A stretch of DNA of 64,000 nt, from NCBI RefSeq assembly GCF_003918875.1, contig NW_025766002.1, positions 1,240,001 through 1,304,000 of the forward strand, written 5' to 3'. The translations under genes were made by a program, and so were the position numbers. The stretch's first letter is position 1. Each line of letters opens with the position of its first letter. Below are positions 28,149 to 62,427 of this stretch, piece by piece. Source of the DNA: Haliotis rubra (taxonomy: Eukaryota). The notes under the pieces were generated by a model. It was not told the DNA's origin and ran no database searches. It worked only from the letters and a program-made list of their open reading frames with translations.

Positions 28149-29582
28149 TCAGCACCACCCAGGACTCCAGGCGCCATTGAAATATTTGGGATTGGAAGCT
28201 GGATCTGGTGCTGGGTCTTGTGCTGGAACACGGCTCTTCTTGTACTCATCCAGCTTCTCTATCATCACTGCAGCTAGTTCTGGATACTTGGCTATTATGT
28301 CTACATGCTCTGTTGGATCCTCTGTGATGTTGAACATCATGTATGGCGGGAACTCCGTATCGTCAGCTTCATATACACTCATGTCCATTCCTAACTTTGG
28401 CAATGGTGCCCAGTTGTTATACTTGCCAGGACTTCCTTGTATAAGTTTCAGATGACCATGTCGGATAGCTGATGTATTTGTCATATCGTATATGTTGTAG
28501 ACAAATCCGTCCCGCTTGCTCTTCCCACCGTTAATGAGCATGTCGTACTGACTGACTCCGTCCATGTTCGGATCTGTGTTTTCTCCACCAGCCAGCTCCA
28601 ACAATGTCGGGTACCAGTCCACAGCATGCATCATTTCCGTGTTGACATAGCCCGTCTTCTTCAAGAGATTCTTACTGTAGATGAAAGCAGCTCCTTTCGT
28701 GCCCCCTTCCCACAACGTAGACTTAGCTCCTCGTAGAGGCAGATTGTTGGCTGCGTCAAAGTAAGGTCCACCATTGTCAGATGTGAACACAAGAAGTAAA
28801 TTATCCATAAACCCTTCTTCTTCAAGACTCTGAACAACCCTTCCAACAGCCTCGTCCAGGGCAGTTACCATACCACAATAAATCCTTCGGTTAATGGTCT
28901 CGATGTTCTTGTACATATCCTCAAACCTCTTGGGTACCTCGAGCGGTACATGCACAGACTGGAACGGCAGGTATAAGTATAATGGCTTGGATTTATCGTG
29001 AGTCTTGATGATTTCAATGGCACGTTCAGTGTACACATCTGCTGAATACTTCCCCTTGTCCTCTCTGTCCACCTCCTTATTTCTCCGGAAGTCCACACCA
29101 GTCATGTTCATTTCGGACCTCGTGTGATTGTAGTAGCCCTCCTTACCTGAATAATAGCCAACGAAAGAATCAAAGCCTCTTTCAGTTGGTGTGTACTTCC
29201 AGTTGCAGAATCCCAAATGCCATTTCCCAACGATATGAGTGGCGTAGCCCAAAGCTTTCATTCTCTGCGGTATGAGTGTGAAGTTTATCGGCAAGTACTT
29301 GGGTTCCACCACAAACACTACTTGATCCTGTAGTCCAGTGTGATAGGGATAGTATCCCGACATGAAGCAATTTCTGGAGGGTGAACACAGTGGCTGGACG
29401 TAAGAAGAGTTGAGGATGACACCAGCTTTGGCCAGTCTGTCCAGGTTAGGTGTGATCATGTCTGGATTGTGCCATCCAACGTCATTCCAGCCGAGGTCGT
29501 CAGCGACGATGAATACAACGTGAGGGGGACTACATGTCGCTAATGTAAAAGTCATTAGAAGGAAAATACCAGTGGAAATCAT
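28149..29582 (-). CDS. ARSB-like: Arylsulfatase B/I/J-like sulfatase, gene 1 (477 aa, intron-free CDS, signal peptide)
   Basis: First ATG at 29582 (the ORF track starts at a TTG). Hydrophobic N-terminus MISTGIFLLMTFTLATC. Motifs IVADDLG, CSPSR (FGly Cys), GKWHLG, RGFD, QSVHVP, SDNGG, RGAKSTLWEGG; C-terminus GAWSPGWC. Confidence 0.95.
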   Translation of the reverse strand: MISTGIFLLMTFTLATCSPPHVVFIVADDLGWNDVGWHNPDMITPNLDRLAKAGVILNSSYVQPLCSPSRNCFMSGYYPYHTGLQDQVVFVVEPKYLPINFTLIPQRMKALGYATHIVGKWHLGFCNWKYTPTERGFDSFVGYYSGKEGYYNHTRSEMNMTGVDFRRNKEVDREDKGKYSADVYTERAIEIIKTHDKSKPLYLYLPFQSVHVPLEVPKRFEDMYKNIETINRRIYCGMVTALDEAVGRVVQSLEEEGFMDNLLLVFTSDNGGPYFDAANNLPLRGAKSTLWEGGTKGAAFIYSKNLLKKTGYVNTEMMHAVDWYPTLLELAGGENTDPNMDGVSQYDMLINGGKSKRDGFVYNIYDMTNTSAIRHGHLKLIQGSPGKYNNWAPLPKLGMDMSVYEADDTEFPPYMMFNITEDPTEHVDIIAKYPELAAVMIEKLDEYKKSRVPAQDPAPDPASNPKYFNGAWSPGWC

Positions 29583-29870
29583 CTCACGTGTCCTCACCCA
29601 AAGGGTTTTACTGAGTAACAAAATTGATGTTAAGTAGACGACCTCACACCTCGACCCACAGGTCCGATAAGACTGAATCTACCACGTTGAAGTATATGTC
29701 GCAATACATGTCGACACGTCGATGTTATATATTATTCTGACCTGTTTGATAAGGAGAGTCCTTGTTTTAAGTGATTTATAGTTTCATATCAAAGTGATAA
29801 GGCCAAAGTGTAACTGGAAATCAGGGTCAGCCCTGTGCGGACATCTGTGCTCATGGGCACACTATTTATA

Positions 29871-30204: not shown

Positions 30205-30590
30205 TCAGTCAGTACCTGGTGTAGCCGCCCTCGCACGGAGAGCATCTACTCGTCGTCTCCTCATACTGGCAATCAAGCGTCAACTTCTCATTATCGGTAT
30301 ATCTGCCATTCCTGATGGAATACCTGTGTCGTACAGATGTTGATTAGAGGATCTCTAGCTAGAATTTGTTGTCCAAGATAGTACCAAAGAGTGAGTGAGT
30401 TAAGTTTTACGCCGCTTGTAGCAATATTCCAGCAATATCACGGCGGGGAACACCAGAAATGGGCTTCACGCATTGTACCCATGTGGGGAATCGAACCCGG
30501 GTCTTCGGCGTGACGAGCGAACGCTTTAACCACTAGGCTACCCCACCGCCCTTAGTACCAAAGATGTTAGATGGGGTTCATATTGGGTTA
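30205..30590 (-). mobile_element. Highly decayed Tc1 transposase 3' remnant interrupted by a SINE
   Basis: With the SINE removed, the - strand reads PNMNPI*HLW (SPDLNPIEHLW-like). The end tcagtacctggtg matches the Tc1 at 24975. Confidence 0.55.
30391..30552 (-). mobile_element. tRNA-derived SINE family 1, young full-length copy
   Basis: A and B boxes, (ACTC)n tail, perfect 12-bp TSD tagtaccaaaga at 30379-30390 and 30553-30564. Confidence 0.93.
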
Positions 30591-30880
30591 TGATAATATC
30601 GTCACTATTTTCAAACAATTGTTTTTCACATATTGCTGATCAGATATCATCATAAATATTGTGCTTACACTTGACTTCAAAGGGGACAATGGAATACAAT
30701 AAAGTGATCTATTGTATTCATCATCATACATCGAACTTTGTACGGTGAACCACAATCCCACTTATTCTCAACCCTCAAAATTCGATTTTAAACCATCAAA
30801 GGCAGCTTTTTTGTATTAAAATAAACATATACATGATGGCAGAATTGGTTTATTGAAAACAAATGCTCTACATCTAAGAG

Positions 30881-31045: not shown

Positions 31046-31074
31046 TAAATCTAAGAGCTTAGACAGCCAAATTA

Positions 31075-32521: not shown

Positions 32522-32528
32522 TATACTA

Positions 32529-36790: not shown

Positions 36791-36848
36791 GTTATCTGTT
36801 GGAAACCTTTAAATAGAAGCACACTGCACCACACTGAACAGAAACACA
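36791..36848 (+). promoter_or_regulatory. Conserved proximal element of gene 2: TTATCT (GATA) plus TTTAAATA (TATA-like)
   Basis: TTATCT at 36792 and TTTAAATA at 36808. Homologous blocks lie before gene 3 (46426/47520), gene 4 (52602/52618), gene 5 (60928) and the relic (40489). Confidence 0.5.
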
Positions 36849-38285
36849 ATGAGCCTCCTAAGAGCTGTTTTATTCTGGTTTGTTGTGACTTTCTGTGAGG
36901 GTGCGGAGAAACCTCACATTGTGTTTATCGTAGCTGATGACCTCGGATGGAACGATGTTGGATTCCGGAACCCTCAAATGATCACCCCTAACCTGGACAG
37001 ACTGGCCAAAGCGGGAGTCATCCTCAACTCATCTTACGTCCAGCCTCTATGCTCGCCCTCCAGAAGTTGTTTCATGTCGGGGTATTTCCCTTATCACACT
37101 GGTCTACAAGATGGCGTTGTAAGGATAAACGCAGCAAAATTCCTTCCTGCTAACTTAACAACAATCCCACAGAAACTGAAACAACTTGGTTATGATGCCC
37201 ACATGGTTGGGAAGTGGCACCTTGGCTTCTGTAACTGGAAGTATACACCCACAGAGAGAGGCTTTGACTCCTATCTTGGATTTTACTCTGGTGATGAGGA
37301 ATATTTTACTCACATGACAAATGATGGTAAAGGGGCACTGGATTTTCGCTTCAACAAAACTGCCTATAAAGATGCCAATGGAACCTATTCTGCAAATGTG
37401 TTTGGTAACAGGGCTGTTGAAATCATTGAGAACCACGACGATAGTAAGCCACTCTATCTGTACCTTCCATTCCAGGATGTTCACGGGCCTCTTGAGGTTC
37501 CACCTAAATATGAAAACATGTACAAGAACATAGAAAACCGAAAAAGAAGGATCTATTGTGGAATGGTGAGTGCTTTAGACGAAGCTGTTGGAAACATCAC
37601 GAAGGCATTAGAAGAAAAAGGTCTCATGGACAATCTATTGTTGGTCTTTACAACTGATAATGGTGGCCCTACATTTGTTGCTGCCAATAACTTGCCGTTA
37701 CGGGGAGCCAAAAATACTCTCTGGGAAGGAGGGACGAAAGGCACAGGGTTCATCTACAGTAAATCCCTTCTGAAGAAGACAGGCTACCTCAACACTGGAA
37801 TGATGCATGCTGTGGACTGGTACCCAACATTAGTGGAGTTGGCTGGTGGAGAAAACACTGATCCCAACATGGACGGAGTCAGTCAGTACGACATGCTCAT
37901 CAATGGTGGACCCAGCAAGCGAAATGAGTTCGTCTACAACATCTATGACGAGAGAGAAGCAGCTGCAATCAGGTACGGAGATCTCAAGCTCATGCAAGGC
38001 AGTCCGGGAGATCACAATGGTTGGGCTCCTTTACCACATTTGGGAATTGATGAAGATGTCTATGAAGCTGATAACCAAACGTTCCCTCCCTTCATGCTCT
38101 ACAACATCACTGCAGATCCAACCGAACACTTTGACCTCTCTTCCAAGTATCCTGATCTACTGGACATGATGAAGAAGAGGCTGGAGAACTGGAAGAAGTC
38201 TCGTGTTCCTGCCCAGAACGATTCCCCTGTTCCTGCATCGAACCCTAAGTACTTCGGTGGTGTATGGAGTCCTGGATGGTGTTGA
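36849..38285 (+). CDS. ARSB-like: Arylsulfatase B/I/J-like sulfatase, gene 2 (478 aa, intron-free CDS, signal peptide)
   Basis: Signal-like MSLLRAVLFWFVVTFCEG; motifs ADDLG, CSPSR, GKWHLG, RGFD, QDVHGP, TDNGG, RGAKNTLWEGG; AATAAA at 38384. Confidence 0.96.
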   Translation: MSLLRAVLFWFVVTFCEGAEKPHIVFIVADDLGWNDVGFRNPQMITPNLDRLAKAGVILNSSYVQPLCSPSRSCFMSGYFPYHTGLQDGVVRINAAKFLPANLTTIPQKLKQLGYDAHMVGKWHLGFCNWKYTPTERGFDSYLGFYSGDEEYFTHMTNDGKGALDFRFNKTAYKDANGTYSANVFGNRAVEIIENHDDSKPLYLYLPFQDVHGPLEVPPKYENMYKNIENRKRRIYCGMVSALDEAVGNITKALEEKGLMDNLLLVFTTDNGGPTFVAANNLPLRGAKNTLWEGGTKGTGFIYSKSLLKKTGYLNTGMMHAVDWYPTLVELAGGENTDPNMDGVSQYDMLINGGPSKRNEFVYNIYDEREAAAIRYGDLKLMQGSPGDHNGWAPLPHLGIDEDVYEADNQTFPPFMLYNITADPTEHFDLSSKYPDLLDMMKKRLENWKKSRVPAQNDSPVPASNPKYFGGVWSPGWC

Positions 38286-40330: not shown

Positions 40331-40609
40331 TCACAGGTGCTGTGATTTCAGTTATAGTTTGTGGGAAAAATCATCGTGTTTCCAACACCTACATGGCGTC
40401 TTTCTTGTATATCTTAACAAAAGGACGATCCAGATGGTTATCACAAAGAAAGAATTATATGCTCTGGGCTTGCCACAATAGACAAGCGTTATCTGTTGGA
40501 AATAGAAGAACACTGTACCACACTGAACACAAACACAATGAGCCTCCTAAGAGCTGTATGTATCCTCTTGACTTTCGTGATCTGTGAGTGCGCGGAGTTC
40601 GTCTATTGA
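40331..40609 (+). pseudogene. Arylsulfatase relic: promoter plus signal-peptide-only micro-ORF (40538-40609, MSLLRAVCILLTFVICECAEFVY*)
   Basis: 40331-40500 is colinear with 46284-46440. The first 20 codons match the gene 5 signal peptide at 19 of 20 residues, then homology stops abruptly. Confidence 0.9.
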
Positions 40610-41034: not shown

Positions 41035-44000
41035 GAGTGAGTGAGTGAGTTATAATTTATCGTCACATCGGCAATATTTCAGCCATATCGTGACGAGAAC
41101 ATTTTATTGTTATACATAGTAATTTATGGTAAATTATAAAACTCTGTCATCGAAGGACAGTAAAACCGACTAGAATATCACAATATCAAGAAATAAAACT
41201 AGCATATATGTCTAAAATAGGATTTCAGATTAGGACAATACAAATATAAAAAAGGCTGAGGATCGCCAACAACCGATGGTAGACCACCACTCTAGGGACC
41301 ATGGGGACTTACAGTACTTTGGCTACCTGCATGGACCCTAGCTGGATTTATACCATCCCTTCAGCCATTGGCGATTGTACTGATAGTTAGCCATAATAAA
41401 ACAACAAATATTCTACGATTAAAAAAGTGTGTAGATCTGAATAGACTTTGAAAGTTTTGGGACTTACGTACCCTCCCAGTAGGACAATAATTTTACAGTA
41501 CTTTAACCCCCTGTGAGGGTACAGCCACTAACAATCTAAGTTACTAATCTAAACTACCAATCATTAAAATACATCTATCTACAGAACATATTAATCAGAA
41601 TTCATCAATGAAATCAATTTCTTTTAAAAAAACAACAATTAAATGAGTACTAACACTGGTAAAAGATCCTTAAGTGTTTTTACATTGAAATATTTATCCC
41701 TTATGATGGAGAATTCAACACAGTCAAGCAGGATATGCTTGACCGTGACTCCGTGACTCTCTCATCACAAGGGATACAAAACGGAGGATCTTCACCTTTT
41801 AACAAGTATTTGTGAGTATATCTAATATGGCCAATACGACATCGTCGCATGATGACCTCTTCAAATCTGGACTGACAACCCAAGTAGGTGTAACCGATAG
41901 TTGGTTTTATTTCATGTAATTTATTGATACCCACTTGGGTGTCCCACTTCTTCTGCATCAGATCACGGATGTAAGTTCTAATGGTAGCTTTGTAATCAGA
42001 GTAAGGAATGAGAAGTGGTGCCACAGATTTGTTGATCAGCCATTGTGTTCCCAGAAATACCAACGTGACTGGGTAACCAACAGAAGACGATGTCGTATTG
42101 GCCAGTAGCAACTTTTTGCTGTACAGATCCTCATAGAGGGGATGAAAGACACAGTTATATGCAGAGTTCGACTGATTAGAATATAGTTTAGTAATATACT
42201 GCAAAGATAATGTGATACGGGGTTGGTTTAGAGAAGGCTCGTCAGCTTCAACGTAAATACTATCAATAGGAGAAGTTCGGAAAGATCCAAGACAAAGTCT
42301 GAGACCTTGGCGATGAACAGAATCAAGTAGTTTCAAATTGCTTTTACAGGCTCCACCACATACGATTGAGCCATAATCAACTTTTGACCGGATGAGTGAT
42401 CTGTACAAATGAAGGAGGGTAGTTGATCCCCTCCCCACTTAGAATTGGACACGACTTTTAATAGATCTAATGCCTTCAGGCATTTAGTCTTCAAATACTT
42501 AATATGTGGTAAAAAGGTCAAATGTTTGTCGAAAATCAGTCCCAGAAACTTGACTTCCTTTACAACGTTAATTGGAGAGCCATCCAAGTACAGTTCGGGA
42601 TATTTATGAGGCTTATATTTCCGACAGAAATGTATACATTTGGTCTTTATCTGTGATAATTTAAAGCCATTCTCAAGTGACCATTTATGAATTTTATTTA
42701 AACACATCTGTAATTGTCTCTCGATGGTATGCATATTTTCACCACGACATGAAACGTTAAAATCATCCACAAACAATGACCCATCTATTGAGTCATTTAA
42801 TACTTTTGAGAGACTATTGATTTTTATGCTAAACAAAGTAACAGACAAAATACTGCCTTGTGGAACCCCCTGATCCTGATTATAATGGTCAGACAGGGTT
42901 GATCCAACACGAACTTGAAATTGCCTGTCTGATAAAGACTGTGATATAAAATGAGGCAAACCAAATTTCTTAAAATACCATGTTTCCAAAATCTCTTAAA
43001 ATACCATGTTTCCATGTTGTATCATAAGCTTTTTCTACATCGAAAAAGATTGAAACGGCATGCTGGTTATTTACAATGGAATTTTTAACGAATGATTTTA
43101 GTCGAACCAACTGGTCAATAGTGCTTCTATTTTTGCGAAAACCACATTAGATGTTAGTAATAAGATTATTGGATTCTAGAAACCATACTAATCTATTATT
43201 GACCATGCGTTCCATGGTCTTGCAAACGCAGCTAGTTAGTGAAATAGGTCTGTAGTTTGATGGATCTGTATGATCCCGGCCAGGCTTAAGTATTGGTACA
43301 ACAATGGCATGACACCACGAAGGCGGAAAGTGCCCTGTTGTCCAAATGTTCAGAAGTGTTTCAAGACATGCATTGGGTAAATGTTTCAGGAGCTGATAGT
43401 GGATATTATCAGCACCTGTTGCCGTATCATGAGCTTGCGCTAAGGCAGTATTCAGCTCATGTAGTGAAAATACTTCATTATAATCTTCACCATTATCAGA
43501 GTGAAAGTTAATTTTAAGTTTTTCGTGATGATCTTTATATTTCTGAAACTTTGGATTATAGTTTGATGAAGAAGAATGTGTAGCTAAAGTTTCACCCAAC
43601 TTGTTTGCAATTTCAATTTTATCAGTTAAAAGATCATGTCCATCTTTGAGATGATGAACACTAGAATTTCTACCTTTGCCCTTGATTCTCTGTATCATGT
43701 TCCACACCTTCGTCATTGGCGTACGGGAATAAATCTTTGATACAAAGTTCTTCCAAGACTGTCGTTTACTTTGTTTAAAAGGACGTCGAGCCTATGGCAT
43801 TGTTTATTTTAAAATTATTTAAATTGTGTACTGCAGGGTGACGGCAAAAGTATTTCTCTGCCTTCTTCCTACACTTCCTAGCTTGTTTACAATCGTCAGT
43901 AAACCATGGTTTACGAACATGTGGTTTAGCAGAAGCCTTAGGAATAGTTTCATCGGCAATATTATTCAGTTTAGCAGAGAACAACTCAATCGGATCTGAA

Positions 44001-46150
44001 ACATTGACAAAAAGGTCAGATTTCAAGTTGTCAGCACACAGTGTCTGAAATAATGGCCAGTTAGCCTTATTAAAATTCCACCTTGTAGTAGATGGGTCAT
44101 CACTCGGGTTTATAGCGGAAAGTATTGTAGGAAAATGGTCACTTCCACACAGGTCATCGTGGACTGACCACTTAAATTCGTTGTAAATATTTGGGTCTGT
44201 GAGCGACAGATCGAGTGCAGAATAAGTTCCCGAACCAGGGTGTAAATATGTGACAGATCCATCATTAAAGATGCATAAATTATTGTTTGAAATGAAGTCC
44301 TCAATGATTTTTCATTTATTGTTGGTATCGGCACTACCCCACACAGGGTTATGGCCGTTTAGATCTGTCATGATTATACATGGTTGAGGAAGTTGGTCAA
44401 AGAGATCCTGAAGATCGGACTGCTGAAGCGCTGAAGAAGGAGAAATATACAAAGAACAAAGCGTAAAGGTTATCTGTAAAGAAAGACGGACAGCAATAGC
44501 CTGAAGATTGCTTTTAAGAGGAACCGGGCTATGGATAACACCCTGCCTCACGAGAATAGAGCTGCCGCCAGTTGCTTTATCACCTGGAGGGGAGAATGAA
44601 TGGAAGTAATTGTACCGACGCAATTCAAATTTATCTGTACTTTTAAAGTAGGTCTCTTATAAACTAAAAACCGATGGATTAAAATCTTGTGATAATAATT
44701 GTAGATCATTAAAATTATCCCTAAGGCCTCTGCAATTCCATTGTATTAAATTAATAGAGTTGTTCATGGCGCTTCAGCCGGGGATCTTGACCGCGAGGAA
44801 CGTCTACTCCCTCGCCCTGGCTGTGAGGGAGTGACCTCTATATCAAGAGGTCCAAACGGATTGTGAACCGTCACGGATGATGTCGAGGTAGATGGTACCT
44901 CTAAATGCTGGAGCATTTGCTCTTGGCAGCTTTTTCTTTTCTTTATTTGACAACTGGCTAACTTTTGATTGTGTCCTGGTTTTGTTCAGACAGAACAAAG
45001 CAAAGTCTCTGGTTCTTGTTCTGTCTGGACGAGGCAGATGTTGACGAACTTTGCTCATTTTTTGGAAAGAGTGGGTGTATTCATTGATTGTTACTTGTTT
45101 GGTTTTTACCCAAGATATGGGTGTCTGGCATGAAGTTGAAACTTTGGTTTGATGAAACTTTGATGAACAGGGGTAGAAACAGTGGCTGAATATGTTCGAG
45201 TTGTAGTAGTTTTAGACTGTCCAGGTATTAACTTTTTGGCTTCTTGGTAGGAGAGGGTTGTTAGTTCATTTTAAGAATCTTTGACATGATTTCAACGATG
45301 CCACGATGCCATGACCGCTACAGTTAGCACATCTGATGTCTTTTGTACATTCAGTGTTATTATGAGCCCCCACTGCAACGGGAGCATACTGTTTTACGAG
45401 TGCATTACTTGGCACCGTGTCCAAATTTTTGGCATTGCAGCGGATTAGGTATGTAGACATCAACTGGGACATTAAAGTAACCAGCTTTAATAGCTTTTAG
45501 TAGAGCCGACAGCCCAAAGGTGAACAGGTAAGTATTTGTTTTAATTATATCTGCCTCCTGTTTTCTGGTAAACCGCTTAACAGCAGTTACTCCTTGGTGT
45601 TTCAATTCATCAACGATTTCTTCTTCTGTCATGTACGCCAGACAACGAGATCGGTCACGGATGATACCGCTGCAAGAGTTCAATGTCCCGTGCACAGAGA
45701 AAACATCCTGTGCATTAACAAACTGTTGTAATCCCAACAAGTTTACAGATTGTTGCCTCCCGGCACATTCAAAAAGAAGTGAGACAGAACGAAGACGTGT
45801 GACGTTTGCTACCTCTCCACAGACACCTTTGATGCCCATCGATATAGCAAACGGATTCAATGTTAATGGACTTCCATCTGCTGTTTCAGTAACCAAGAAT
45901 CTCAGCCATGAATCCACTAACGCTGAAGAGACTTCATCATCAGATGATGTTGAAAGATGTTGACGTTTATTCGTTTTTGAACCAGGGGGGAATGCTGTGA
46001 GCCATGGTAATATAATGATTTTTAGCAACCCTCATCTCCACCTGCCATCGAGTGTCAGCAAAGACGATCCTGCAGTGGAAACCAAACTGCCAGATCAGAG
46101 CTGCAGGGATGCTACACTCCAGAAATACAGACATAAATACAGAGACGGAT
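41035..46150 (-). mobile_element. Degenerate near-full-length I-clade (I/Nimb-like) LINE: gag-like ORF1 plus APE-RT-RNase H ORF2
   Basis: ORF1 from ~46005 (NPFAISMGI..VTRLRS..PNPLQCQKFGH and CANCSG knuckles). ORF2 44767 to ~41595 has IQWNCRG, DLNGHN, NYRPISLTSC, GVPQGSILS, LFVDD, a remnant FCWLPSHVGISGN and RRCRIGH. Many frameshifts; (ACTC)n tail at 41035. Confidence 0.93.
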
Positions 46151-46446
46151 GATACGATGTGCCGTTGAGACTGACATCCAATAAGCGAGGGGGAAAAAGA
46201 CCAGCGCCTTGAGCATGTACTAGTTGCTTGGATATGTGCGCTATATAAATATCCTATAATATTAAATAATATATAAAAAGACCTCACAGGTGCTGTTATA
46301 GGTTTTGTGAAAAAGCCGTGTTTCCAACACCTACATGGCGTCTTTATTGTAGATCTTAACAAAAGGACGACCCAGCTGGTAATCACAAAGAAAGAATGCA
46401 TGCTCTAAACTTGCCACGACGCACGTTATCTGTTGGAAACCTTTAA

Positions 46447-47520
46447 AGGTCACATGCAACCAAAAAATCAAACATAATTAAAACACAATTATCACTTCTT
46501 CATGACATATAATATGCATTGCTGATTATGAAAAAACAAATAAACAAAATTATAAGCGTATAATCGCAAATCAAAAGTGCAATATTTTGTACTTGGGTTT
46601 ACCTCCCTCGAAACGAAGCAGCCGGGATACCGAACCCAGTCAGAGCGGGTGGGTGTGCACTCAAGTGTAACGGCTGGTTCATTAGCAGATGCCGCCTTCA
46701 CGGGTCAATGTGTGTGTATATATAGAAAGTGCGGTTTTGTAAATACATGCTCATTTTTTTGTGTATAACATTTTGCAATCAACAGACATCATAACATGTC
46801 ATGTGTTCAAGTATCACACCTGCCTGTCTGTGTAATTACATAATGTGACAGAGACCGAACTCGGGCCATAAATCAATGCGTTTTGTTTATGGTGTATAGC
46901 CTGATTGGTGTTAAGTTCAAATTGCATGTGGTCAGTGATCGCAGTTGTGTATTGAATATTGTCATTAGCAGACAGGCAGGCAGACACACTGGTGTCAATA
47001 AAACAAGACATTGAGTTTTGTCTGTGACAGCGACATATCTATATCACAGTTAGAAATTGTGTCAACGCTAAATAATGACATTGCTTTTAAGTATCGAACT
47101 GAGAAAGTGACTCGGTAAGAAGAACGTGTGGTGAAATAGACGAATGAAATTATATAAACAGTTTATTTACTGTCATAACATACAAAAAGCTCGCGCCTGT
47201 GAGATATCAACAAAACATTATGAAACTAGCTCACACCAAAGCCTTCACCGAGTATTCACCAGACAGCCCGCTTCCAAGTTGCGCGAACCTATTTCACTGC
47301 GCACGTGCTATGAGCGCAGCCAGCTGTTGAAACCCGTATTCCCCAGAAAAGTCTGGGGAAAATTAGTGAAACGTTTGAACTCCGATTTCGCGCGGTTTTT
47401 TTCGTCGCGTTATTTTTCAACTTTATAAGTTGAATTTGCATTTTTGACGCTTTTTTTCGGTAAGTCCCTACCGAAAGGTAACATAATCTGCAAAGTTGTG
47501 TTTTACGTTGCATGTGACCT
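46447..47520. mobile_element. Non-autonomous Kolobok-like DNA transposon (1074 bp)
   Basis: Perfect 14-bp TIR aggtcacatgcaac/gttgcatgtgacct, TTAA TSD at 46443-46446 and 47521-47524, purine-purine 5' terminus. The empty site is seen upstream of gene 2. Confidence 0.88.
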
Positions 47521-47560
47521 TTAAATAGAAGCACACTGTACCACACTGAACAGAAACACA

Positions 47561-49003
47561 ATGAGCCTCCTGTCAGCTGTATGTATTCTCTTGGCTTTTG
47601 GGATCTGTGAGTGTGCAGAGAAACCTCACATTGTTTTTATAGTTGCTGATGACCTTGGCTGGAACGATGTCGGATTTCGGAACCCTCAAATGATCACCCC
47701 TAACCTGGACAGACTGGCTAAAGCTGGTGTCATCCTCAACTCATCCTACGTCCAGCCTCTATGTTCGCCCTCCAGAAATTGTTTCATGTCGGGATATTTC
47801 CCGTATCACACAGGACTCCAAGATGGCGTTGTTGGGATAAACGCAGCAAAACATCTACCGGCCAAGCTAACAATAATACCACAGAAACTGAAACAACTTG
47901 GTTATGATGCCCACATTGTTGGAAAATGGCATCTTGGCTTCTGTAACTGGAAGTATACACCCACAGAGAGAAGCTTTGACTCCTATCTTGGATATTACTC
48001 TGGAATGGAGGACTATCTAACCCATATTATACAGGACCATGAAGGTAACGTGGGACTGGATTTTCGCTTCAACAAAACTGCCTATAGAGACGCCAACGGA
48101 ACCTATTCTACACATATATTTGCCAACAAGGCTGTTGAAATCATTGAGAACCACGACACCAGTAAGCCACTCTATCTGTACCTTCCATTCCAGGCTGTAC
48201 ATTCACCTCTTGAAGTTCCACCTAAATATGAAAATATGTACAAGAACATAGCAACTATGAATAGAAGGATTTATTGTGGAATGGTGAGTGCTTTAGACGA
48301 AGCTGTTGGCAATATCACTAAGGCATTAGAAGACAAAGGTCTCATGGACAATCTCCTGTTGGTCTTTACAACTGATAATGGTGGCCCTACATTTGTTGCT
48401 GCCAATAACCTGCCTTTACGAGGAGCCAAGGCTACACTATGGGAAGGGGGAACGAAAGGAACTGGATTCAGCTACAGTAAATCCCTCCTGAAGAAGACGG
48501 GCTACCTCAACACTGGAATGATGCATGCTGTGGACTGGTACCCGACATTGGTGGAGTTGGCTGGTGGAGAGAACACAGATCCCAACATGGACGGAGTCAG
48601 TCAGTACGACATGCTCATCAATGGTGGACCCAGCAAGCGGAATGAGTTCGTCTACAACATCTATGACGAGATTGATGCAGCTGCAATCAGGTACGGCGAT
48701 CTCAAACTCATGCAAGGCAGTCCGGGAGATCACAATGGTTGGGCTCCTTTGCCACATCTGGGAATTGATGAAGGTGTCTATGAAGCTGATAACCAAACAT
48801 TCCCTCCTTTCATGCTCTACAACATTACTGCAGATCCAACCGAACACTTCGACCTCTCTTCCAAGTATCCAGATCTACTGGACATGATGAAGAAGAGGCT
48901 GGAGAACTGGAAGAAGTCTCGTGTTCCGGCCCAAGACCCTACTCCGGTTCCTGCATCGAACCCGAAGTACTTTGGTGGTGTATGGAGTCCTGGATGGTGT
49001 TGA
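47561..49003 (+). CDS. ARSB-like: Arylsulfatase B/I/J-like sulfatase, gene 3 (480 aa, intron-free CDS, signal peptide)
   Basis: All core motifs present (CSPSR, GKWHLG, QAVHSP, TDNGG, RGAKATLWEGG); RGFD is changed to RSFD; AATAAA at 49115. Confidence 0.94.
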   Translation: MSLLSAVCILLAFGICECAEKPHIVFIVADDLGWNDVGFRNPQMITPNLDRLAKAGVILNSSYVQPLCSPSRNCFMSGYFPYHTGLQDGVVGINAAKHLPAKLTIIPQKLKQLGYDAHIVGKWHLGFCNWKYTPTERSFDSYLGYYSGMEDYLTHIIQDHEGNVGLDFRFNKTAYRDANGTYSTHIFANKAVEIIENHDTSKPLYLYLPFQAVHSPLEVPPKYENMYKNIATMNRRIYCGMVSALDEAVGNITKALEDKGLMDNLLLVFTTDNGGPTFVAANNLPLRGAKATLWEGGTKGTGFSYSKSLLKKTGYLNTGMMHAVDWYPTLVELAGGENTDPNMDGVSQYDMLINGGPSKRNEFVYNIYDEIDAAAIRYGDLKLMQGSPGDHNGWAPLPHLGIDEGVYEADNQTFPPFMLYNITADPTEHFDLSSKYPDLLDMMKKRLENWKKSRVPAQDPTPVPASNPKYFGGVWSPGWC

Positions 49004-51151: not shown

Positions 51152-51329
51152 NNNNNNNNNNNNNNNNNNNNNNNNNNNNNNNNNNNNNNNNNNNNNNNNN
51201 NNNNNNNNNNNNNNNNNNNNNNNNNNNNNNNNNNNNNNNNNNNNNNNNNNNNNNNNNNNNNNNNNNNNNNNNNNNNNNNNNNNNNNNNNNNNNNNNNNNN
51301 NNNNNNNNNNNNNNNNNNNNNNNNNNNNN
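51152..51329. other. Assembly gap between genes 3 and 4
   Basis: Run of N. Confidence 1.
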
Positions 51330-52658
51330 GCGCGCGCGCAAAAACAAAAAAGTCATCATGGTTTTTTTATTGAGAATATTATCAACAACAAGAGCAGAGG
51401 AGTGCGCCAAAAAGGAGGGGCGCGGAAATGACTCGCTTAACAATGCCAATACCAGACGTGACCACCATTTGCCTTGATAAAAGCGACAGAGGGCATTACA
51501 TGGTTGTACACAGCTTGAGGGATGATCTTCAAATTCCAACCAAAGATAGGCCAACCTTAGCTAGCTTTACCGACTGGTTCTGGTCCAGACGTTGTCGTCA
51601 TCCCAGGCATGTTCAATGGAACGAACGTCACCGGACGGCCATGGTAGTATAACAAGTAATACTGCCTCCATAAGTCTGTTACAACATGTGTAACGGCTGG
51701 ATGGGTATAATCCTGCATTAATGTAACGGTACGTCCCTGCATTTACACAAAGTGTACAACATGATCATGGCACCGTACGCCATTCAAATTGGCATTAACA
51801 AAGAAACATTTTACCTAACATCTGAAGACCTTGAGGAAACCTTGCATCGATAAAACATTCTCCTGAGACGCATGAAGACCCTTTCACGACCATGAGAACT
51901 GTCAAGATGAAACCTGGACTGATGTGTGAACAGTCTACTGTTCTAGTCTTGCCTTCTGAACTTCCGCTCGCGTCTTCATGAAACTAGGTGTTTCTGCCGG
52001 TGATGTGAAAACAAGAACTGGATGTCGGGACCGGATATTTTTCATTTTATCCCAGCTGACAGGACGGTTATAAGGCAAAGCAATACCGAGATACAACCAG
52101 CCCCAACTATGCTTCTAGATTTGTCAGCATCATACCCGAGACAAAGGTGCATATTCTTGTTCATTTGATTCGCCTCAAATTATGTTTCTGGGTTTACGAA
52201 CATCATACCCGTACACGTATTCGTGGGTTTCGCCAAAAAACTTCAAAGATATTCAGAACTTTGGGGTTTCCTTCCAGATTAACCTGAGACTCCATGATAT
52301 AAATGGAATGCTGTTCAAGCTGCGTTAAATCCAACTCACTCACTCACTCACTCACTCACTCATTCATTCACTCCAAATCACCAAACCACCCACCCACTTT
52401 GTGTTGTGCACTGAAAACATTTTGTAACTGTGTTCGCCAAACTTTAGGAAGCTTGTATGTTAAAGTTATCTTTAAAATATTAAAATGTAAAACATTTATC
52501 TTTGCAACATCTGCATAGAGTGTAAGGTGTATGTCTTGACAAGTGAAATATCCAGCTGGTAATCTGAAAGAATGCGTCCTTCAGGCTTGTCGTGACATGC
52601 ATTATCTATAGAAAACATTTAAATAGAATCACAATGTATGATACTGAGCAGAAGCAAA

Positions 52659-54107
52659 ATGAGTGTCCAAAGAGCTGTTTTGTTCTGGATTGTTGGAACT
52701 TTTGTTATCTGTGAGTGTGTGGAGAAACCTCATATTGTGTTTATCGTAGCTGATGACCTCGGATGGAACGATGTCGGATTCCGGAACCCTCAAATGATCA
52801 CCCCTAACCTGGACAGACTGGCCAAAGCTGGTGTCATCCTCAACTCATCTTACGTCCAGCCTCTATGCTCGCCCTCCAGAAGTTGTTTCATGTCCGGGTA
52901 TTTTCCGTATCACACTGGTCTACAAGATAGCGTTGTTAAGATAAACGCAGCAAAATTCCTTCCGGCTAACTTAACAACAATCCCGCAGAAACTGAAACAA
53001 CTTGGTTATGATGCCCACATGGTTGGGAAGTGGCACCTTGGCTTCTGTAACTGGAAGTATACACCCACAGACAGAGGCTTTGACTCCTACCTTGGATATT
53101 ACGCTGGAACGGAGAATTATTTTACTCACATTAGAAAGGATGACGAAGGTAACGTGGGACTGGATTTTCGCCTCAACAAAACTGCCTATAGAGACGCCAA
53201 CGGAACCTATTCTACACATATATTTGCAAACAAGGCCGTTGAAATCATTGAGAACCACGACAATAGTAAGCCACTTTATCTATACCTTCCTTTCCAGGCG
53301 GTACATGAACCTCTTCAAGTTCCACCTAAATATGAAAACATGTACAAGAACATAGAAACCATAAATAGAAGGATATATTGTGGAATGGTAACTGCGTTAG
53401 ACGAAGCTGTAGGAAATATCACTAAGGCATTAGAAGACAAAGGTCTCATGGACAATCTACTGTTGATCTTTACAACTGATAATGGTGGTCCCACATTTAT
53501 TGCTGCCAATAACCTGCCTTTACGGGGAGCCAAACATACTCTCTGGGAAGGGGGAACGAAAGGAACTGGATTCATCTACAGTAAAACCCTTCTGAAGAAA
53601 ACGGGCTACCTCAACACTGGAATGATGCATGCTGTGGACTGGTACCCTACTTTGGTGGAGCTGGCCGGTGGTGAAAACACAGATCCCAACATGGACGGAG
53701 TCAGTCAGTACGATATGCTGATCAATGGTGGACCCAGCAAGCGGAATGAGTTCGTCTACAACATCTATGACGAGATTGATGCAGCTGCAATCAGGTACGG
53801 AGATCTCAAGCTCATGCAAGGGAGTCCAGGAATTCACAATGGTTGGGCTCCTTTGCCACATCTGGGAATTGATGAAGGTGTCTATGAAGCTGATAACCAA
53901 GTGTTCCCTCCCTTCATGCTCTACAACATTACTGCAGATCCAACCGAACACTTCGACCTCTCAGCCAAGTATCCTGATCTTCTGGACATGATGAAGAAGA
54001 GGCTGGTGAACTGGAAGAAGTCTCGTGTTCCTGCCCAGAACAATTCTCCTGTTCCTGCATCCTACCCCAAGAACTTCGGTGGCGTATGGAGTCCTGGGTG
54101 GTGTTGA
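52659..54107 (+). CDS. ARSB-like: Arylsulfatase B/I/J-like sulfatase, gene 4 (482 aa from the paralog-aligned ATG; in-frame upstream ATG at 52638)
   Basis: Signal-like MSVQRAVLFWIVGTFVICEC; motifs CSPSR, GKWHLG, RGFD, QAVHEPLQVP (close to human ARSB QSVHEPLQVP), RGAKHTLWEGG. Confidence 0.95.
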   Translation: MSVQRAVLFWIVGTFVICECVEKPHIVFIVADDLGWNDVGFRNPQMITPNLDRLAKAGVILNSSYVQPLCSPSRSCFMSGYFPYHTGLQDSVVKINAAKFLPANLTTIPQKLKQLGYDAHMVGKWHLGFCNWKYTPTDRGFDSYLGYYAGTENYFTHIRKDDEGNVGLDFRLNKTAYRDANGTYSTHIFANKAVEIIENHDNSKPLYLYLPFQAVHEPLQVPPKYENMYKNIETINRRIYCGMVTALDEAVGNITKALEDKGLMDNLLLIFTTDNGGPTFIAANNLPLRGAKHTLWEGGTKGTGFIYSKTLLKKTGYLNTGMMHAVDWYPTLVELAGGENTDPNMDGVSQYDMLINGGPSKRNEFVYNIYDEIDAAAIRYGDLKLMQGSPGIHNGWAPLPHLGIDEGVYEADNQVFPPFMLYNITADPTEHFDLSAKYPDLLDMMKKRLVNWKKSRVPAQNNSPVPASYPKNFGGVWSPGWC

Positions 54108-58975: not shown

Positions 58976-60984
58976 GTGCACTGTTGAGCTCACAACTAGT
59001 TAATACCAAAAATTAGCATGCTATCAGAAGGGCACGAAGAGGTTAGCCTTTTCGCGAACACCTTGTGTAATCCCTGAGTTTCAATGATCCATTTATTGTT
59101 TTTACACAGCTTTTTTACTCTTACACCAAATGGAATCTGTTTCTGAGGATAGACCTGGTTTTCTATTATTTATAGATGTCCTGTCCTTTCAACAATAACC
59201 CCCTACACAAGGCGACCAATGTGCCCGTGTTGCTGTATACCCAGACAGGTGAGGTAAGGGATATCACGCCTGGGATATAATAATAAACAGTGCATTTATG
59301 ATGCGCTAATCTCACTAGGTGAATGCTCATAGCGCTACGAATCTGATTATTATAACCCCGGACAACCCAAGATGCGTGTGAGGCGCTAGAAGGTTAATAG
59401 TGGCATGACTTATCACACTCTATACCCATTTTCTAGTGGGTGAACAGAGGCAATTTTGAACAAACTCACTTTCCTAAGGTGAGACCACATGTATCACATG
59501 TGCTTCGTCACGGGGCAGGAGTCAAGCTGCAAAACATGGTCACCCATCCATGGACTCTCCGCGCTCAACGTTGCTTAACGTCAACTGATTTGTGACCTGT
59601 GCTGTATGCATAGGACCACACACCACCATATATATATATATGTTTGGGTTAGGTTTAAAGTACACATCATTTCCCTTAATCTCTTGGGAGTAGTGAAACA
59701 AATGACGCCACATATTTAATAATATGAATAGGTTTTGTGGTACCAGCACAAACACATGTTGTGGCAAGTCAACTGGCTATATAGATCCGTTTGAGTGCAT
59801 TACCTAACTGATAAGTGATATGACTCATTGATTGAGAGACTGTTCTTTCACATAAAGACAATTGATTTTCCCTTCAACAATCGTACTAATCTGAAAATAT
59901 GTGATCATGTACCAGTCAGATTAATGAGCACGATGAAGGCCCCAGGTCTCCCGGATATGACAACACACGACTATCAAACTACTATCAAACTCACAGAGCC
60001 TCATCACATTGGTTTTAATATATTTATTTCAACTTCGTGTTATACAGCGTATAGGATGTTCGCCGTAGATTTTCCAAAGTATAAACATCAATGAATACCA
60101 GTACAGAAACAGATGACAGGCTGAAGCTATTCATGGTATGATTTGCACATATAATTAACTTAATAAATATCAGAAGATATTATACATGAAATACTATTTT
60201 GAGTGGTTCAGAATACAGGATGTCCTCCGTACATTTTACAGAGAATAAACATCAATGAATACTAGAACAGATACAGATGGCAGGCTGAAGCTATTCATGA
60301 CATGATGGTCTTGCAAGAGTAAAAGCCTTGGGGACCCAACATTCATCCCAGTCGTGTCTATATGTTTCCAAATAGGTAGTTCATTTAGGAACAATTAATC
60401 GGAGATTTTGCAACTACAGGGCATTCAACGTTATTCATTTTGAAACGCGAACACATATACATGTACATAAAAATACATAACCACCAAACACACATTCACA
60501 GGTATTGCTTTTGAAAGCTCAGTACCACCAGGATGAAGTACAACATGGCGCACATGTTTCCCCAGAGAAAGATCAGCTGTCTTAAACAGCTTTCAGATTC
60601 TTGTATTTAATTAAATAAGCGTAATTTGGATAGCTAGCACGATAACACTGTCTTTCTGATATAGATCAGTTCTTTCACAATTTATCACCCATCGCATTCT
60701 TAGAAACAATCAAACACATCTGAAAAAGTTCCACACATGCATCCAGCAACAGGTATGTTAGAATAGAATATTTCATACAACGTTTCACTGATGCCATGTT
60801 ACCATGTACAGGTATAATGTTTTTAGTTACGTTGACGACATCAGCACAGATTCCATGGTATGTGCCTTGACCAGTAGATTATCTAGATGGTAACCATACT
60901 GAAAGAACGCATGTCGTCACGATTGTCTTATCTATCACAAACATACCTAGAGAAGCACAATGTGCCATATTGAGCAGAAGAAAA

Positions 60985-62427
60985 ATGAGCCTCCTACGAG
61001 CTGTATGTATTCTCACGACTTTTGTGATCTGTGAGTGTGCGGAGAAACCTCACATTGTTTTCATAGTTGCGGATGACCTCGGTTGGAACGATGTTGGATT
61101 CCGGAACCCTCAAATGATCACACCTAATCTGGACAGACTGGCCAAAGCGGGAGTCATCCTCAACTCCTCTTACGTCCAGCCTCTATGTTCGCCCTCCAGA
61201 AACTGCTTCATGTCGGGGTATTTCCCGTATCACACTGGACTACAAGATGGCGTTATTCAGACAGAGGCAGCACAATTCCTTCCTGTCAACCTGACAACAA
61301 TCCCTCAGAAACTGAAACAACTTGGCTATGATACTCACATGGTTGGAAAGTGGCATCTAGGTTTCTGTAACTGGAAGTATACACCTACAGAGAGAGGCTT
61401 TGACACCTATCTTGGATATTACTCTGGAATGGAGGACTATTTTACTCACATATCACAGAATCACGGAGGTGACATGGGACTGGATTTTCACTTCAATAAA
61501 ACTGCCTACAGAGACGCCAATGGTACATATTCTGCACATTTGTTTGCAGACAGAGCCATTGAAATCATCGACAACCACGATAAAAGCAAGCCACTTTATA
61601 TGTACCTCCCATTCCAGTCGGTACATGAACCTCTTGAAGTTCCGCCCAAATATGAAAACATGTACAAGAACATAGAAACCAAAAAAAGAAGGATATATTG
61701 TGGAATGGTGACAGCGTTAGACGAAGCTGTTGGCAATATCACTAGGACATTAGAAGAAAAAGGGCTTATGGACAATCTACTATTAGTCTTTACAACTGAT
61801 AATGGTGGTCCTACGTATAAAGCTGCTAATAACTTGCCTTTGCGAGGTGCCAAGGCTACACTATGGGAAGGGGGAACGAAAGGAACTGGATTCATCTACA
61901 GTAAATCCCTTCTCAAGAAGACGGGCTACCTCAACACTGGAATGATGCATGCTGTGGACTGGTACCCGACATTGGTGGAGTTGGCTGGTGGAGAGAACAC
62001 AGATCCCAACATGGACGGAGTCAGTCAGTACAACATGCTCATCAATGGTGGAGCCAGCAAGCGAAATGAGTTCGTCTACAACATCTATGACGAGATTGAT
62101 GCAGCTGCAATACGGTACGGAGATCTTAAGCTCATCCAAGGCAGTCCAGGAGCTCACAATGGTTGGGCTCCTTTGCCACATCTGGGAATTGATGAAGGTG
62201 TCTATGAAGCTGATAACCAAACGTTCCCTCCCTTCATGCTCTACAACATCACTGCAGATCCAACCGAACACTTCGACCTCTCAGCCATGTACCCTGAGCT
62301 GGTGGACATGATGAAGAAGAGGCTAGAAATCTGGAAACAGTCTGGTGTTCCGGCGCAGGACAATTCTAGTATTCCTGCAGCAAACCCAAAATACTATGAC
62401 GGTGTATGGAGCCCAGGCTGGTGTTAA
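60985..62427 (+). CDS. ARSB-like: Arylsulfatase B/I/J-like sulfatase, gene 5 (480 aa, intron-free CDS, signal peptide)
   Basis: ATG at 60985; MSLLRAVCILTTFVICEC; motifs CSPSR, GKWHLG, RGFD, QSVHEP, RGAKATLWEGG, GVWSPGWC; AATAAA near 62500. Confidence 0.96.
   Translation: MSLLRAVCILTTFVICECAEKPHIVFIVADDLGWNDVGFRNPQMITPNLDRLAKAGVILNSSYVQPLCSPSRNCFMSGYFPYHTGLQDGVIQTEAAQFLPVNLTTIPQKLKQLGYDTHMVGKWHLGFCNWKYTPTERGFDTYLGYYSGMEDYFTHISQNHGGDMGLDFHFNKTAYRDANGTYSAHLFADRAIEIIDNHDKSKPLYMYLPFQSVHEPLEVPPKYENMYKNIETKKRRIYCGMVTALDEAVGNITRTLEEKGLMDNLLLVFTTDNGGPTYKAANNLPLRGAKATLWEGGTKGTGFIYSKSLLKKTGYLNTGMMHAVDWYPTLVELAGGENTDPNMDGVSQYNMLINGGASKRNEFVYNIYDEIDAAAIRYGDLKLIQGSPGAHNGWAPLPHLGIDEGVYEADNQTFPPFMLYNITADPTEHFDLSAMYPELVDMMKKRLEIWKQSGVPAQDNSSIPAANPKYYDGVWSPGWC

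What the first reader, a model, noticed from the sequence alone, without database searches (positions are those of the whole stretch)
28149..62427. Tandem array of five intact, intron-free, signal-peptide ARSB-like sulfatases: a candidate digestive sulfatase system
Seen: five complete 477-482 aa ORFs within 34 kb, each with a signal peptide, several N-glycosylation sequons, the Cys-type CSPSR formylglycine motif and an ARSB-like GxWSPGWC end. Two relics bring the count to at least seven copies. Established: vertebrate ARSB is a multi-exon single-copy lysosomal GalNAc-4-sulfatase, and gastropod gut extracts are a classic source of sulfatase activity. Inference: an intronless, possibly retroposed, ARSB/I/J-type copy was amplified into a lineage-specific battery for desulfating dietary algal polysaccharides or sulfated metabolites.
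Basis: partly seen in the sequence, partly recalled or inferred. Interest (0 to 1): 0.8.

Follow-up and report, generated by a model that had tools for sequence, protein, structure and literature searches.

The report
Abalone intron-free ARSB-like sulfatase gene array
Blacklip abalone DNA carries five intact, intron-free genes for sulfate-removing enzymes, part of a family of at least 27 that arose from one intron-less copy in the abalone lineage; they probably help digest sulfated seaweed sugars, but that was not tested.

Summary
The window (Haliotis rubra, contig C1112) holds five intact single-exon ARSB-like sulfatase genes plus two short relics. All five have a hydrophobic N-terminal leader, 6-8 N-glycosylation sequons, the CSPSR formylglycine motif and every catalytic residue. 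The assembly gap lies between genes and touches no coding sequence.

The copies are not haplotypes or artefacts: dS is 0.27-0.48 and dN/dS 0.15-0.23 among S2-S5. S1 is an old paralog (dS above 2).

The array runs far beyond the window. Contig C1112 has at least 19 intact copies over about 343 kb, and other contigs add 8 more. Every intron state checked outside this family (Patella, chiton, bivalve, Gigantopelta, two other Haliotis paralogs) shows 10 or more separate coding pieces. The 27 Haliotis genes treated as intron-free form one clade (support 91/98); single-exon state was confirmed in H. rufescens and H. asinina. This points to one retroposition-like event followed by tandem amplification.

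Variation is concentrated in two loops (omega about 1), against 0.03 in the catalytic core.

The digestive role remains inferred; the RNA data were inconclusive. The genes are already RefSeq models. The scan had already reported the same array on neighbouring DNA.

The parts
28149..29582 (-). S1: intact single-exon ARSB-like sulfatase gene, 477 aa, inverted relative to the others; sole H. rubra member of old subclade C
   Evidence: (dS above 2 against S2-S5, dN/dS about 0.09); H. rufescens ortholog in the same 90% cluster
36849..38285 (+). S2: intact single-exon sulfatase gene, 478 aa (main-array subclade A)
47561..49003 (+). S3: intact single-exon sulfatase gene, 480 aa (subclade A); used for the structure model
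52638..54107 (+). S4: intact single-exon sulfatase gene; 489 aa from 52638, more likely 482 aa from the ATG at 52659
60985..62427 (+). S5: intact single-exon sulfatase gene, 480 aa
36332..36454 (+). Relic 1: 41-codon fragment of the C-terminal domain, about 400 bp upstream of S2
   Evidence: 78-80% identity to S4/S5, E 1e-16
40523..40597 (+). Relic 2: 25-codon fragment covering the start and leader peptide of a lost copy
   Evidence: 80-85% identity to S3/S5
36792..36815 (+). Conserved promoter block of S2: TTATCT (GATA site, reverse strand) at -57 and TTTAAATA at -41 from the ATG. The same block is at 52602-52625 (S4). At 60928-60933 (S5) only the GATA motif is present
   Evidence: TTATCT sits at the same aligned place in 12 of 13 subclade A copies
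47520..47527 (+). TATA-like box of S3; the GATA motif is missing here because homology to the other copies ends at 47517
46030..47516 (.). Very high-copy repeat directly upstream of the S3 core promoter (boundaries approximate)
   Evidence: summed contig depth up to about 1e6 in a DNA run, against a few hundred over the gene; homology to S2 starts at 47517
51152..51329 (.). Assembly gap, intergenic between S3 and S4
41701..43716 (-). Decayed reverse-transcriptase ORFs (non-LTR-type element) in the S2-S3 spacer
   Evidence: PF00078, E 4e-15

Best explanation
The five genes belong to a Haliotis-specific family of formylglycine-dependent (S1, ARSB-like) sulfatases. The family began when one processed, intron-free copy of a many-exon ARSB-like gene entered the genome of an abalone ancestor. 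That copy acquired or kept a compact promoter. It then multiplied by tandem duplication, with some dispersal, to at least 27 intact genes in five subclades. Each gene looks like a compact unit of about 1.6-1.7 kb: a TATA-like box about 40 bp before the ATG, a GATA site about 15 bp further up, a 1.44-kb exon, and a poly-A signal 70-200 bp after the stop. The proteins enter the secretory pathway through an N-terminal leader. Their Cys in CSPSR is converted to formylglycine by the genome's own FGE. They then hydrolyse sulfate esters using the standard metal-dependent S1 mechanism. The catalytic core is under strong purifying selection, whereas two surface loops (S3 residues 89-97 and 147-166) differ from copy to copy. 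I infer that the copies differ in substrate preference. Their most likely job is desulfating sulfated algal glycans, and possibly other dietary sulfate esters, in the digestive gland or gut, either extracellularly or in the endo-lysosomal digestion typical of molluscs. Shown here: gene integrity, family, intron loss, single origin, amplification and selection pattern. Inferred: transcription unit, secretion, substrates and tissue.
For: Integrity and family. All 11 catalytic or metal-binding residues are invariant in 27 paralogs, and they align to D53, D54, C91, R95, K145, H147, H242, D300, N301 and K318 of human ARSB. The AlphaFold model has pLDDT 93.8, and its best structural match is 1fsu (TM 0.89, 41% identity). 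The next matches are bacterial S1_19 carrageenan galactose-4-sulfatases. FGE genes are present in the genome. Real, old, constrained copies: dS 0.27-0.48 and dN/dS 0.15-0.23 among S2-S5; dS above 2 for S1. Extent: at least 19 intact copies plus at least 6 broken ones on C1112 between 1.03 and 1.37 Mb, plus C2414 (2), C2703 (5) and C595 (1). Intron loss: Patella vulgata, Liolophura, Potamilus, Gigantopelta and the Haliotis paralogs P0032 and P0068 show 10-14 separate coding pieces. H. rufescens P0004 and H. asinina P0014 are single-exon. Single origin: the intron-free genes form one clade, UFboot 91 / SH-aLRT 98. Loop diversification. Promoter block. Context: four ARSB proteins were found by mass spectrometry in scallop hepatopancreas (PMC5159873). 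The Pfam Sulfatase family is enriched in mussel digestive gland (PMC5549309). Dominant abalone gut bacteria are poor in sulfatases (PMC5870069). An ARSB-derived gut sulfatase in the herbivore Plutella is a precedent (PMC5066984).
Against: There is no expression or tissue evidence. The only runs found held 5-24% of the words, were not confirmed as RNA, and gave short contigs about 90% alike. A leader peptide is shared by lysosomal ARSB, so secretion into the gut lumen is not shown. Omega in the variable loops is about 1 (0.89-1.12) and no single site was significant in my counting test, so relaxed constraint is not excluded. No poly-A remnant, target-site duplication or intron-bearing parent inside the clade was found, so retroposition is inferred only from the complete loss of introns. 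Only two of the non-rubra genes labelled intron-free in the tree were checked directly. S3 has lost the GATA motif to a repeat insertion and may be poorly expressed.
Confidence: 0.55

Rival explanations
1. The genes encode ordinary lysosomal enzymes that break down the animal's own glycosaminoglycans, as vertebrate ARSB does. The many copies would only raise dosage or be near-neutral duplicates.
For: The closest characterised relative is lysosomal ARSB. The leader peptide and N-glycan sequons are equally typical of lysosomal hydrolases. Mussel authors read digestive-gland sulfatases as lysosomal (PMC5549309).
Against: Housekeeping turnover rarely needs 27 or more intact paralogs, each kept under purifying selection (dN/dS about 0.2) for dS 0.3 to above 2. 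Copy-specific loops sit on an invariant core. The same genome also holds large arrays of intron-bearing ARSB-like genes that could serve the housekeeping role. In molluscs, lysosomal and digestive roles overlap, so this rival partly merges with the main reading.
Confidence: 0.2
2. The enzymes act on small sulfated metabolites rather than polysaccharides, for example sulfated algal phenolics, steroids or saponins. That would be a detoxification or activation role like the glucosinolate sulfatase of Plutella or the arylsulfatase of muricid snails.
For: Plutella glucosinolate sulfatase arose by duplication of an ARSB-like gene (PMC5066984). Gastropod arylsulfatases are discussed as acting on sulfated saponins and Tyrian purple precursors (PMC5519703). 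Variable pocket loops would suit diverse small substrates.
Against: There is no direct evidence. The nearest structural relatives after ARSB are carbohydrate 4-O-sulfatases.
Confidence: 0.15
3. The family serves development, settlement, extracellular matrix or shell and mucus biology rather than feeding.
For: A 1991 paper title reports heterogeneous sulfatases of H. rufescens whose synthesis changes during development (Spaulding and Morse, listed as ref. 80 in PMC5519703; the paper was not readable here).
Against: A developmental change could equally reflect the onset of feeding. No expression data are available here.
Confidence: 0.08
4. The copies are assembly artefacts or uncollapsed haplotypes.
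For: One assembly gap lies inside the array.
Against: Coding sequences differ by 10-15% at the DNA level, with dS 0.27-0.48. The spacers are unrelated and hold different transposon remnants. A comparable tandem array of single-exon genes exists in the independent H. rufescens assembly.
Confidence: 0.01

Closest known systems
Human arylsulfatase B / N-acetylgalactosamine-4-sulfatase (SulfAtlas S1_2; PDB 1fsu)
   Same: Same fold (TM 0.89) and 41% identity. Same formylglycine motif and all catalytic and metal-binding residues. Both have a leader peptide and N-glycan sequons.
   Different: The vertebrate gene is single-copy and has many exons. The abalone genes are single-exon and number 27 or more. 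They lack the Cys-bridged loop of ARSB in the segment equivalent to S3 147-166, and that segment is hypervariable here. They end in a conserved WSPGWC. The substrate is unknown.
Bacterial S1_19 carrageenan sulfatases (for example 6bia/6b0j, 6prm/6psm, 9hh2-4)
   Same: They are the next-best solved relatives (E about 1e-52 to 1e-54, TM 0.76-0.79, 27-29% identity). Like ARSB, they remove a 4-O-sulfate from a galacto-configured sugar, and they act on red-algal polysaccharide (PMC6923384).
   Different: They belong to a different subfamily and are bacterial. There are large insertions and deletions exactly in the loops that vary among the abalone copies. No shared substrate has been shown.
Plutella xylostella glucosinolate sulfatase (SulfAtlas S1_10)
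   Same: It is an ARSB-derived duplicate recruited by a herbivore to deal with a dietary sulfate ester (PMC5066984). It is a precedent for the proposed logic.
   Different: It is from an insect, acts on a small-molecule substrate, and has few copies. Its intron state was not examined here.
Scallop hepatopancreas arylsulfatase B proteins
   Same: These are mollusc ARSB-like enzymes found as proteins in the digestive gland and discussed as seaweed-polysaccharide enzymes (PMC5159873).
   Different: Seven genes are reported for scallop. The bivalve relatives examined here (Potamilus) have 13 coding pieces.
Intron-bearing ARSB-like arrays in the same genome ('m' family, e.g. P0073, P0100)
   Same: Same enzyme family, 51-55% identical, and also amplified in tandem.
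   Different: They match exon by exon. They form a separate, well-supported clade.

Membership tests
S1 formylglycine-dependent sulfatases (Pfam PF00884) | Sulfatase domain above the curated score | tested here: met
   173-203 bits against a cut-off of 25 for all five
S1 formylglycine-dependent sulfatases (Pfam PF00884) | C/S-x-P-x-R signature at the catalytic position | tested here: met
   CSPSR in all five window genes and 26 of 27 paralogs; CSPTR in one
S1 formylglycine-dependent sulfatases (Pfam PF00884) | Metal-binding and catalytic residues (ARSB D53, D54, R95, K145, H147, H242, D300, N301, K318) | tested here: met
   Invariant in 27 paralogs and in an 88-sequence alignment; aligned to 1fsu
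S1 formylglycine-dependent sulfatases (Pfam PF00884) | Alkaline-phosphatase-like two-domain fold | tested here: met
   Model pLDDT 93.8; Foldseek E 8e-59 and TM 0.89 to 1fsu
S1 formylglycine-dependent sulfatases (Pfam PF00884) | Cys actually converted to formylglycine; sulfate-ester hydrolysis | not testable with these tools
   Only the maturation gene was sought: FGE (PF03781) exons on C557 and C2189
SulfAtlas subfamily S1_2 (ARSB/ARSI/ARSJ type) | Closer to ARSB than to any other characterised subfamily | tested here: met
   1fsu at E 2e-109 against E 4e-54 for the next (S1_19). No SulfAtlas profile library or vertebrate ARSI/ARSJ sequences were available, so formal placement was not done
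SulfAtlas subfamily S1_2 (ARSB/ARSI/ARSJ type) | GalNAc-4-sulfate specificity | not testable with these tools
   Needs an enzyme assay
Retrogene (processed-copy) family | All introns of the parental gene structure absent from the coding region | tested here: met
   Single uninterrupted ORFs, against 10-14 separate coding pieces in relatives
Retrogene (processed-copy) family | Single origin of the intron-free state | tested here: met
   One clade, 91/98 support, one change needed on the tree. Only P0004 and P0014 among the non-rubra rows were checked directly
Retrogene (processed-copy) family | Poly-A remnant, target-site duplications, identifiable parent | tested here: inconclusive
   Homology between copies ends about 45-130 bp before the ATG and 30-100 bp after the stop. 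No A-tract is shared in the 3' flanks. No intron-bearing Haliotis gene falls inside the clade. With dS above 2 between subclades, such marks would have decayed
Secreted digestive enzyme | Signal peptide | tested here: met
   Hydropathy heuristic and small residues at -1/-3; modelled as a detached low-confidence helix. No dedicated predictor was available
Secreted digestive enzyme | Expression in digestive gland, gut or saliva; presence in digestive fluid | tested here: inconclusive
   Runs found were not confirmed as RNA and gave only short contigs about 90% alike

The most novel reading that the evidence does not exclude
Abalone digest sulfated seaweed polysaccharides largely with their own genome-encoded enzymes. 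On this reading, a retrogene-founded battery of 27 or more ARSB-like sulfatases, together with a second intron-free sulfatase family of 30 or more genes, has pocket loops diversified to cover carrageenan, porphyran, fucoidan and ulvan sulfation patterns. This would take over a task that other marine herbivores leave to gut bacteria.
Probability: 0.3. Interest if true: 0.75.

Novelty: new member of a known kind. Interest (0 to 1): 0.5.

Why it matters
Sulfate esters block most glycoside hydrolases and lyases, so desulfation gates the use of carrageenan, porphyran, fucoidan and ulvan. In the sea this step is known almost only from bacteria. The dominant gut bacteria of abalone are reported to be poor in sulfatases (PMC5870069), so who removes the sulfate in abalone is an open and practical question for aquaculture feed.

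This family gives a defined, cloneable set of candidate host enzymes. Natural loop variants sit on one scaffold, which suits specificity studies and the enzymatic tailoring of algal polysaccharides. It is also a clean case of a processed gene copy becoming the founder of a large, selectively maintained tandem family.

Tried and rejected
Spacing and flanks beyond the 30 loci rest on the coordinates.

2. The RNA evidence was inconclusive. The look-up of sequencing runs listed no confirmed RNA holder. Read laying gave only short contigs about 90% alike over the gene and huge depth over the upstream repeat.

3. P0023 (Mya) was not on record in the look-up of encoding contigs, so Potamilus served as the bivalve example.

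4. Spaulding and Morse 1991 on H. rufescens sulfatases is not held. Only its title is used.

I could only show that the loops coincide with insertion- and deletion-rich segments against ARSB and S1_19.

6. My SLAC-like site test found no site with p below 0.05, so positive selection is not claimed.

7. GATA-like motifs upstream of subclades B to E occur at about chance frequency and are not position-conserved. Only the subclade A block is used.

8. Horizontal transfer from bacteria is rejected. The nearest relatives are mollusc genes at 56-62% identity, against 27-29% for bacterial enzymes.

9. The codon-aligned antisense ORFs inside S3 to S5 are treated as a by-product, not as genes.

10. Four literature searches found no paper describing intron-free sulfatase arrays in abalone.


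Full report
**What is in the window**

The window is G000:C1112:1240001-1304000 of a 1.38-Gb assembly. The word-indexed protein search names the organism: the window's proteins sit among RefSeq models called 'arylsulfatase B-like' or 'J-like' from Haliotis rubra, on a 9,431,463-bp contig.

ORF listing shows five complete sulfatase reading frames:
- S1: 28149-29582 (-), 477 aa.
- S2: 36849-38285 (+), 478 aa.
- S3: 47561-49003 (+), 480 aa.
- S4: 52638-54107 (+), 489 aa, or 482 aa from the ATG at 52659.
- S5: 60985-62427 (+), 480 aa.

The S4 start at 52659 is more likely. It aligns with the starts of the other copies and lies downstream of the TATA-like box.

All five match Pfam Sulfatase at E 1e-50 to 1e-60. 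All carry CSPSR, 6-8 N-glycosylation sequons, a hydrophobic leader and the WSPGWC end.

Two relics are real but short: 41 codons at 36332-36454 and 25 codons at 40523-40597.

**The gap**

The N run at 51152-51329 lies between the S3 stop and the S4 start. A sensitive tblastn search of 50300-52637 finds no sulfatase-like sequence. No reading frame of the finding depends on the gap. Only the S3-S4 distance is uncertain. I did not look up or infer the missing letters.

**Are the copies real?**

Yes. Among S2-S5 the coding DNA is 85-89% identical. dS is 0.27-0.48 and dN/dS is 0.15-0.23. S1 is an old paralog, with dS above 2 and dN/dS about 0.09.

Homology between copies stops about 45-130 bp before the ATG and 30-100 bp after the stop. 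The spacers are unrelated and hold different transposon debris. At dS of 0.3-0.5 that is what old tandem duplicates should look like.

An independent assembly of H. rufescens has the same kind of array of single-exon genes at a spacing of about 8 kb. Haplotype or assembly artefacts are excluded.

**Extent of the family**

A six-frame search of the whole genome finds 13 intact copies of the S2-S5 type on C1112 between 1,276,849 and 1,370,779. A second group of five lies at 1,027,592-1,203,676. S1 stands alone. At least six broken copies or fragments are also present.

Further intact single-ORF copies lie on C2414 (2), C2703 (5) and C595 (1). That makes 27 in all, plus a lone divergent one on C1391.

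The genome also holds large tandem arrays of intron-bearing ARSB-like genes. It has at least 30 further full-length single-ORF sulfatase domains of another type on other contigs.

**What the proteins are**

The best solved relative by sequence is human ARSB (1fsu, E 2e-109). Bacterial S1_19 carrageenan sulfatases follow at about E 1e-52 to 1e-54.

An AlphaFold model of S3 built on 88 homologs is confident (pLDDT 93.8). Its best structural match is again 1fsu (TM 0.89, 41% identity), then the S1_19 enzymes.

All catalytic and metal-binding residues are invariant in all 27 paralogs. FGE genes, needed to make formylglycine, are present. In SulfAtlas terms, ARSB is subfamily S1_2 (PMC5066984).

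**Origin**

The closest relatives outside the family all show 10-14 separate coding pieces, with recurring piece boundaries. These are Patella vulgata P0022, the chiton Liolophura P0029, the bivalve Potamilus P0020, Gigantopelta P0036, and the Haliotis paralogs P0032 and P0068.

H. rufescens P0004 and H. asinina P0014 are single-exon.

In a careful maximum-likelihood tree of 53 proteins, the 27 intron-free Haliotis genes form one clade that excludes every intron-bearing gene (UFboot 91, SH-aLRT 98).

The simplest account is one processed (reverse-transcribed) copy in the Haliotis stem lineage. That event came before H. asinina split from the temperate species. Tandem and dispersed duplication into five subclades followed.

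Poly-A or target-site marks were not found, and at this age would not be expected. Bacterial transfer is excluded by 56-62% identity to other mollusc genes.

**Selection pattern**

Variation among the 13 main-array copies is sharply localised: the leader peptide, residues 89-97 and residues 147-166 of S3.

A parsimony-based count of substitutions gives the following omega values:

| S3 residues | omega |
|---|---|
| 20-88 (catalytic core) | 0.03 |
| 89-97 | 1.12 |
| 147-166 | 0.89 |
| remaining mature protein (four segments) | 0.12-0.23 |

No single site reached p below 0.05, so I cannot separate positive selection from relaxed constraint.

The two loops coincide with the segments where ARSB and the S1_19 enzymes differ by insertions and deletions. 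That fits specificity loops, but it is not a 3-D test.

Codons of about 300-440 are 91-96% identical across the whole main array. Synonymous divergence there is only 0.10-0.19, against 0.3-0.5 elsewhere. Gene conversion is the likeliest cause. If so, the dS values underestimate the age of the duplicates.

**Transcription unit (inferred)**

Twelve of the 13 main-array copies keep TTATCT (a GATA site) at -54 to -58 from the ATG. Most also have a TATA-like box at about -40. This is the best-conserved block in otherwise diverged upstream DNA.

AATAAA or ATTAAA follows 70-200 bp after the stops of S2-S5.

GATA factors commonly drive gut genes in animals (general knowledge), so this is a hint towards gut expression and nothing more.

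In S3 a very high-copy repeat ends at about 47516. That is just upstream of the TATA-like box, and the GATA motif is gone there.

**Function**

Tissue expression could not be established. The digestive reading rests on context:
- Four ARSB proteins were detected in scallop hepatopancreas (PMC5159873).
- The Pfam Sulfatase family is enriched among mussel digestive-gland transcripts (PMC5549309).
- Arylsulfatase B-like proteins and dozens of transcripts were found in a gastropod salivary gland (PMC5519703).
- The core gut bacteria of abalone are sulfatase-poor (PMC5870069).
- Plutella provides a precedent for an ARSB-derived dietary sulfatase (PMC5066984).

The nearest solved enzymes remove a 4-O-sulfate from GalNAc or galactose. 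4-sulfated galactans such as carrageenan are therefore a reasonable first substrate guess, but it is untested.

Lysosomal housekeeping, small-molecule desulfation and developmental roles remain open rivals.

**Relation to earlier notes of this scan**

The same array was already reported on neighbouring DNA (s1-329442, s1-329456). A similar one was reported elsewhere in the genome (s1-322312). Intron-free arrays of a second sulfatase type were also reported (s1-349425, s1-329470).

My results agree on copy number, loop variability and partial homogenisation. They add the intron states of outgroups, the single-clade test and the dating relative to three Haliotis species. They do not reproduce significant positive selection.

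**Verdict**

This is a real and well-defined lineage-specific gene family of an ordinary enzyme class. The genes are already present as RefSeq models but, as far as the searchable literature shows, the family is not described. The evolutionary story is well supported. The physiological role is plausible but unproven.

Noticed in passing
G000 contigs C2191 (450-547 kb), C2320 (79-100 kb), C2185 (982-1018 kb), C580, C536, C2516 and others: At least 30 further full-length sulfatase domains sit in single open frames. They are of a different type from the ARSB-like genes (domain span about 356 aa) and are arranged in tandem arrays. Earlier notes of the scan call them IDS-like. Intron-free sulfatase arrays therefore arose in at least two subfamilies.
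   Followed up: partly
G000 contigs C2424, C476, C228, C617, C2481, C2170, C2198, C691: Intron-bearing ARSB-like genes ('m' family, 51-55% identical to the window genes) are also amplified in large tandem arrays. Dozens of last-exon matches were seen.
   Followed up: partly
G000:C1391:457551-458975: A lone, divergent (48-50% identity) ARSB-like gene lies in one open frame of 537 aa. It may be an independent processed copy. Its DNA could not be fetched.
   Followed up: no
window 48437-48847, 53520-53951, 61861-62271 (- strand), inside S3, S4 and S5: Codon-aligned antisense ORFs of 136-143 aa lie exactly in the stretch (codons about 300-440) where synonymous divergence across the array is lowest (pS 0.10-0.19). 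Gene conversion plus a lack of TTA, CTA and TCA codons is the likely cause, but nucleotide-level constraint was not excluded.
   Followed up: partly
window 46030-47516: A very high-copy repeat (summed contig depth up to about 1e6 in a DNA run) is inserted right up to the TATA-like box of S3. It displaces the GATA motif that 12 of 13 sister copies keep.
   Followed up: partly
window 41701-43716 (-) and 24975-25376 (-): Decayed reverse-transcriptase ORFs (PF00078, E 4e-15) lie in the S2-S3 spacer. A weak DDE_3 transposase remnant lies upstream of S1.
   Followed up: no
window 30386-30554, 30876-31060, 32350-32523, 34653-34826, 50584-50772, 55386-55565: A dispersed repeat of about 165 bp (82-93% identity, both orientations) is scattered through the spacers. 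It is SINE-like in size.
   Followed up: no
window 15758-17629 and 20385-21282: A long low-complexity tandem repeat gives a spurious 426-aa ORF. Three further N gaps lie upstream of the array.
   Followed up: no
L038 (H. asinina CM074540.1) 12391-13939: A sulfotransferase gene (PF00685) lies about 3.5 kb from the called gene range of the single-exon subclade D sulfatase gene of H. asinina.
   Followed up: no
G000:C1112:1311036-1312454, 1323389-1324803, 1191490-1195035, 1211759-1214050: Broken copies with frameshifts, stops or rearranged pieces are interspersed with the intact ones, so the array is undergoing birth-and-death turnover.
   Followed up: partly
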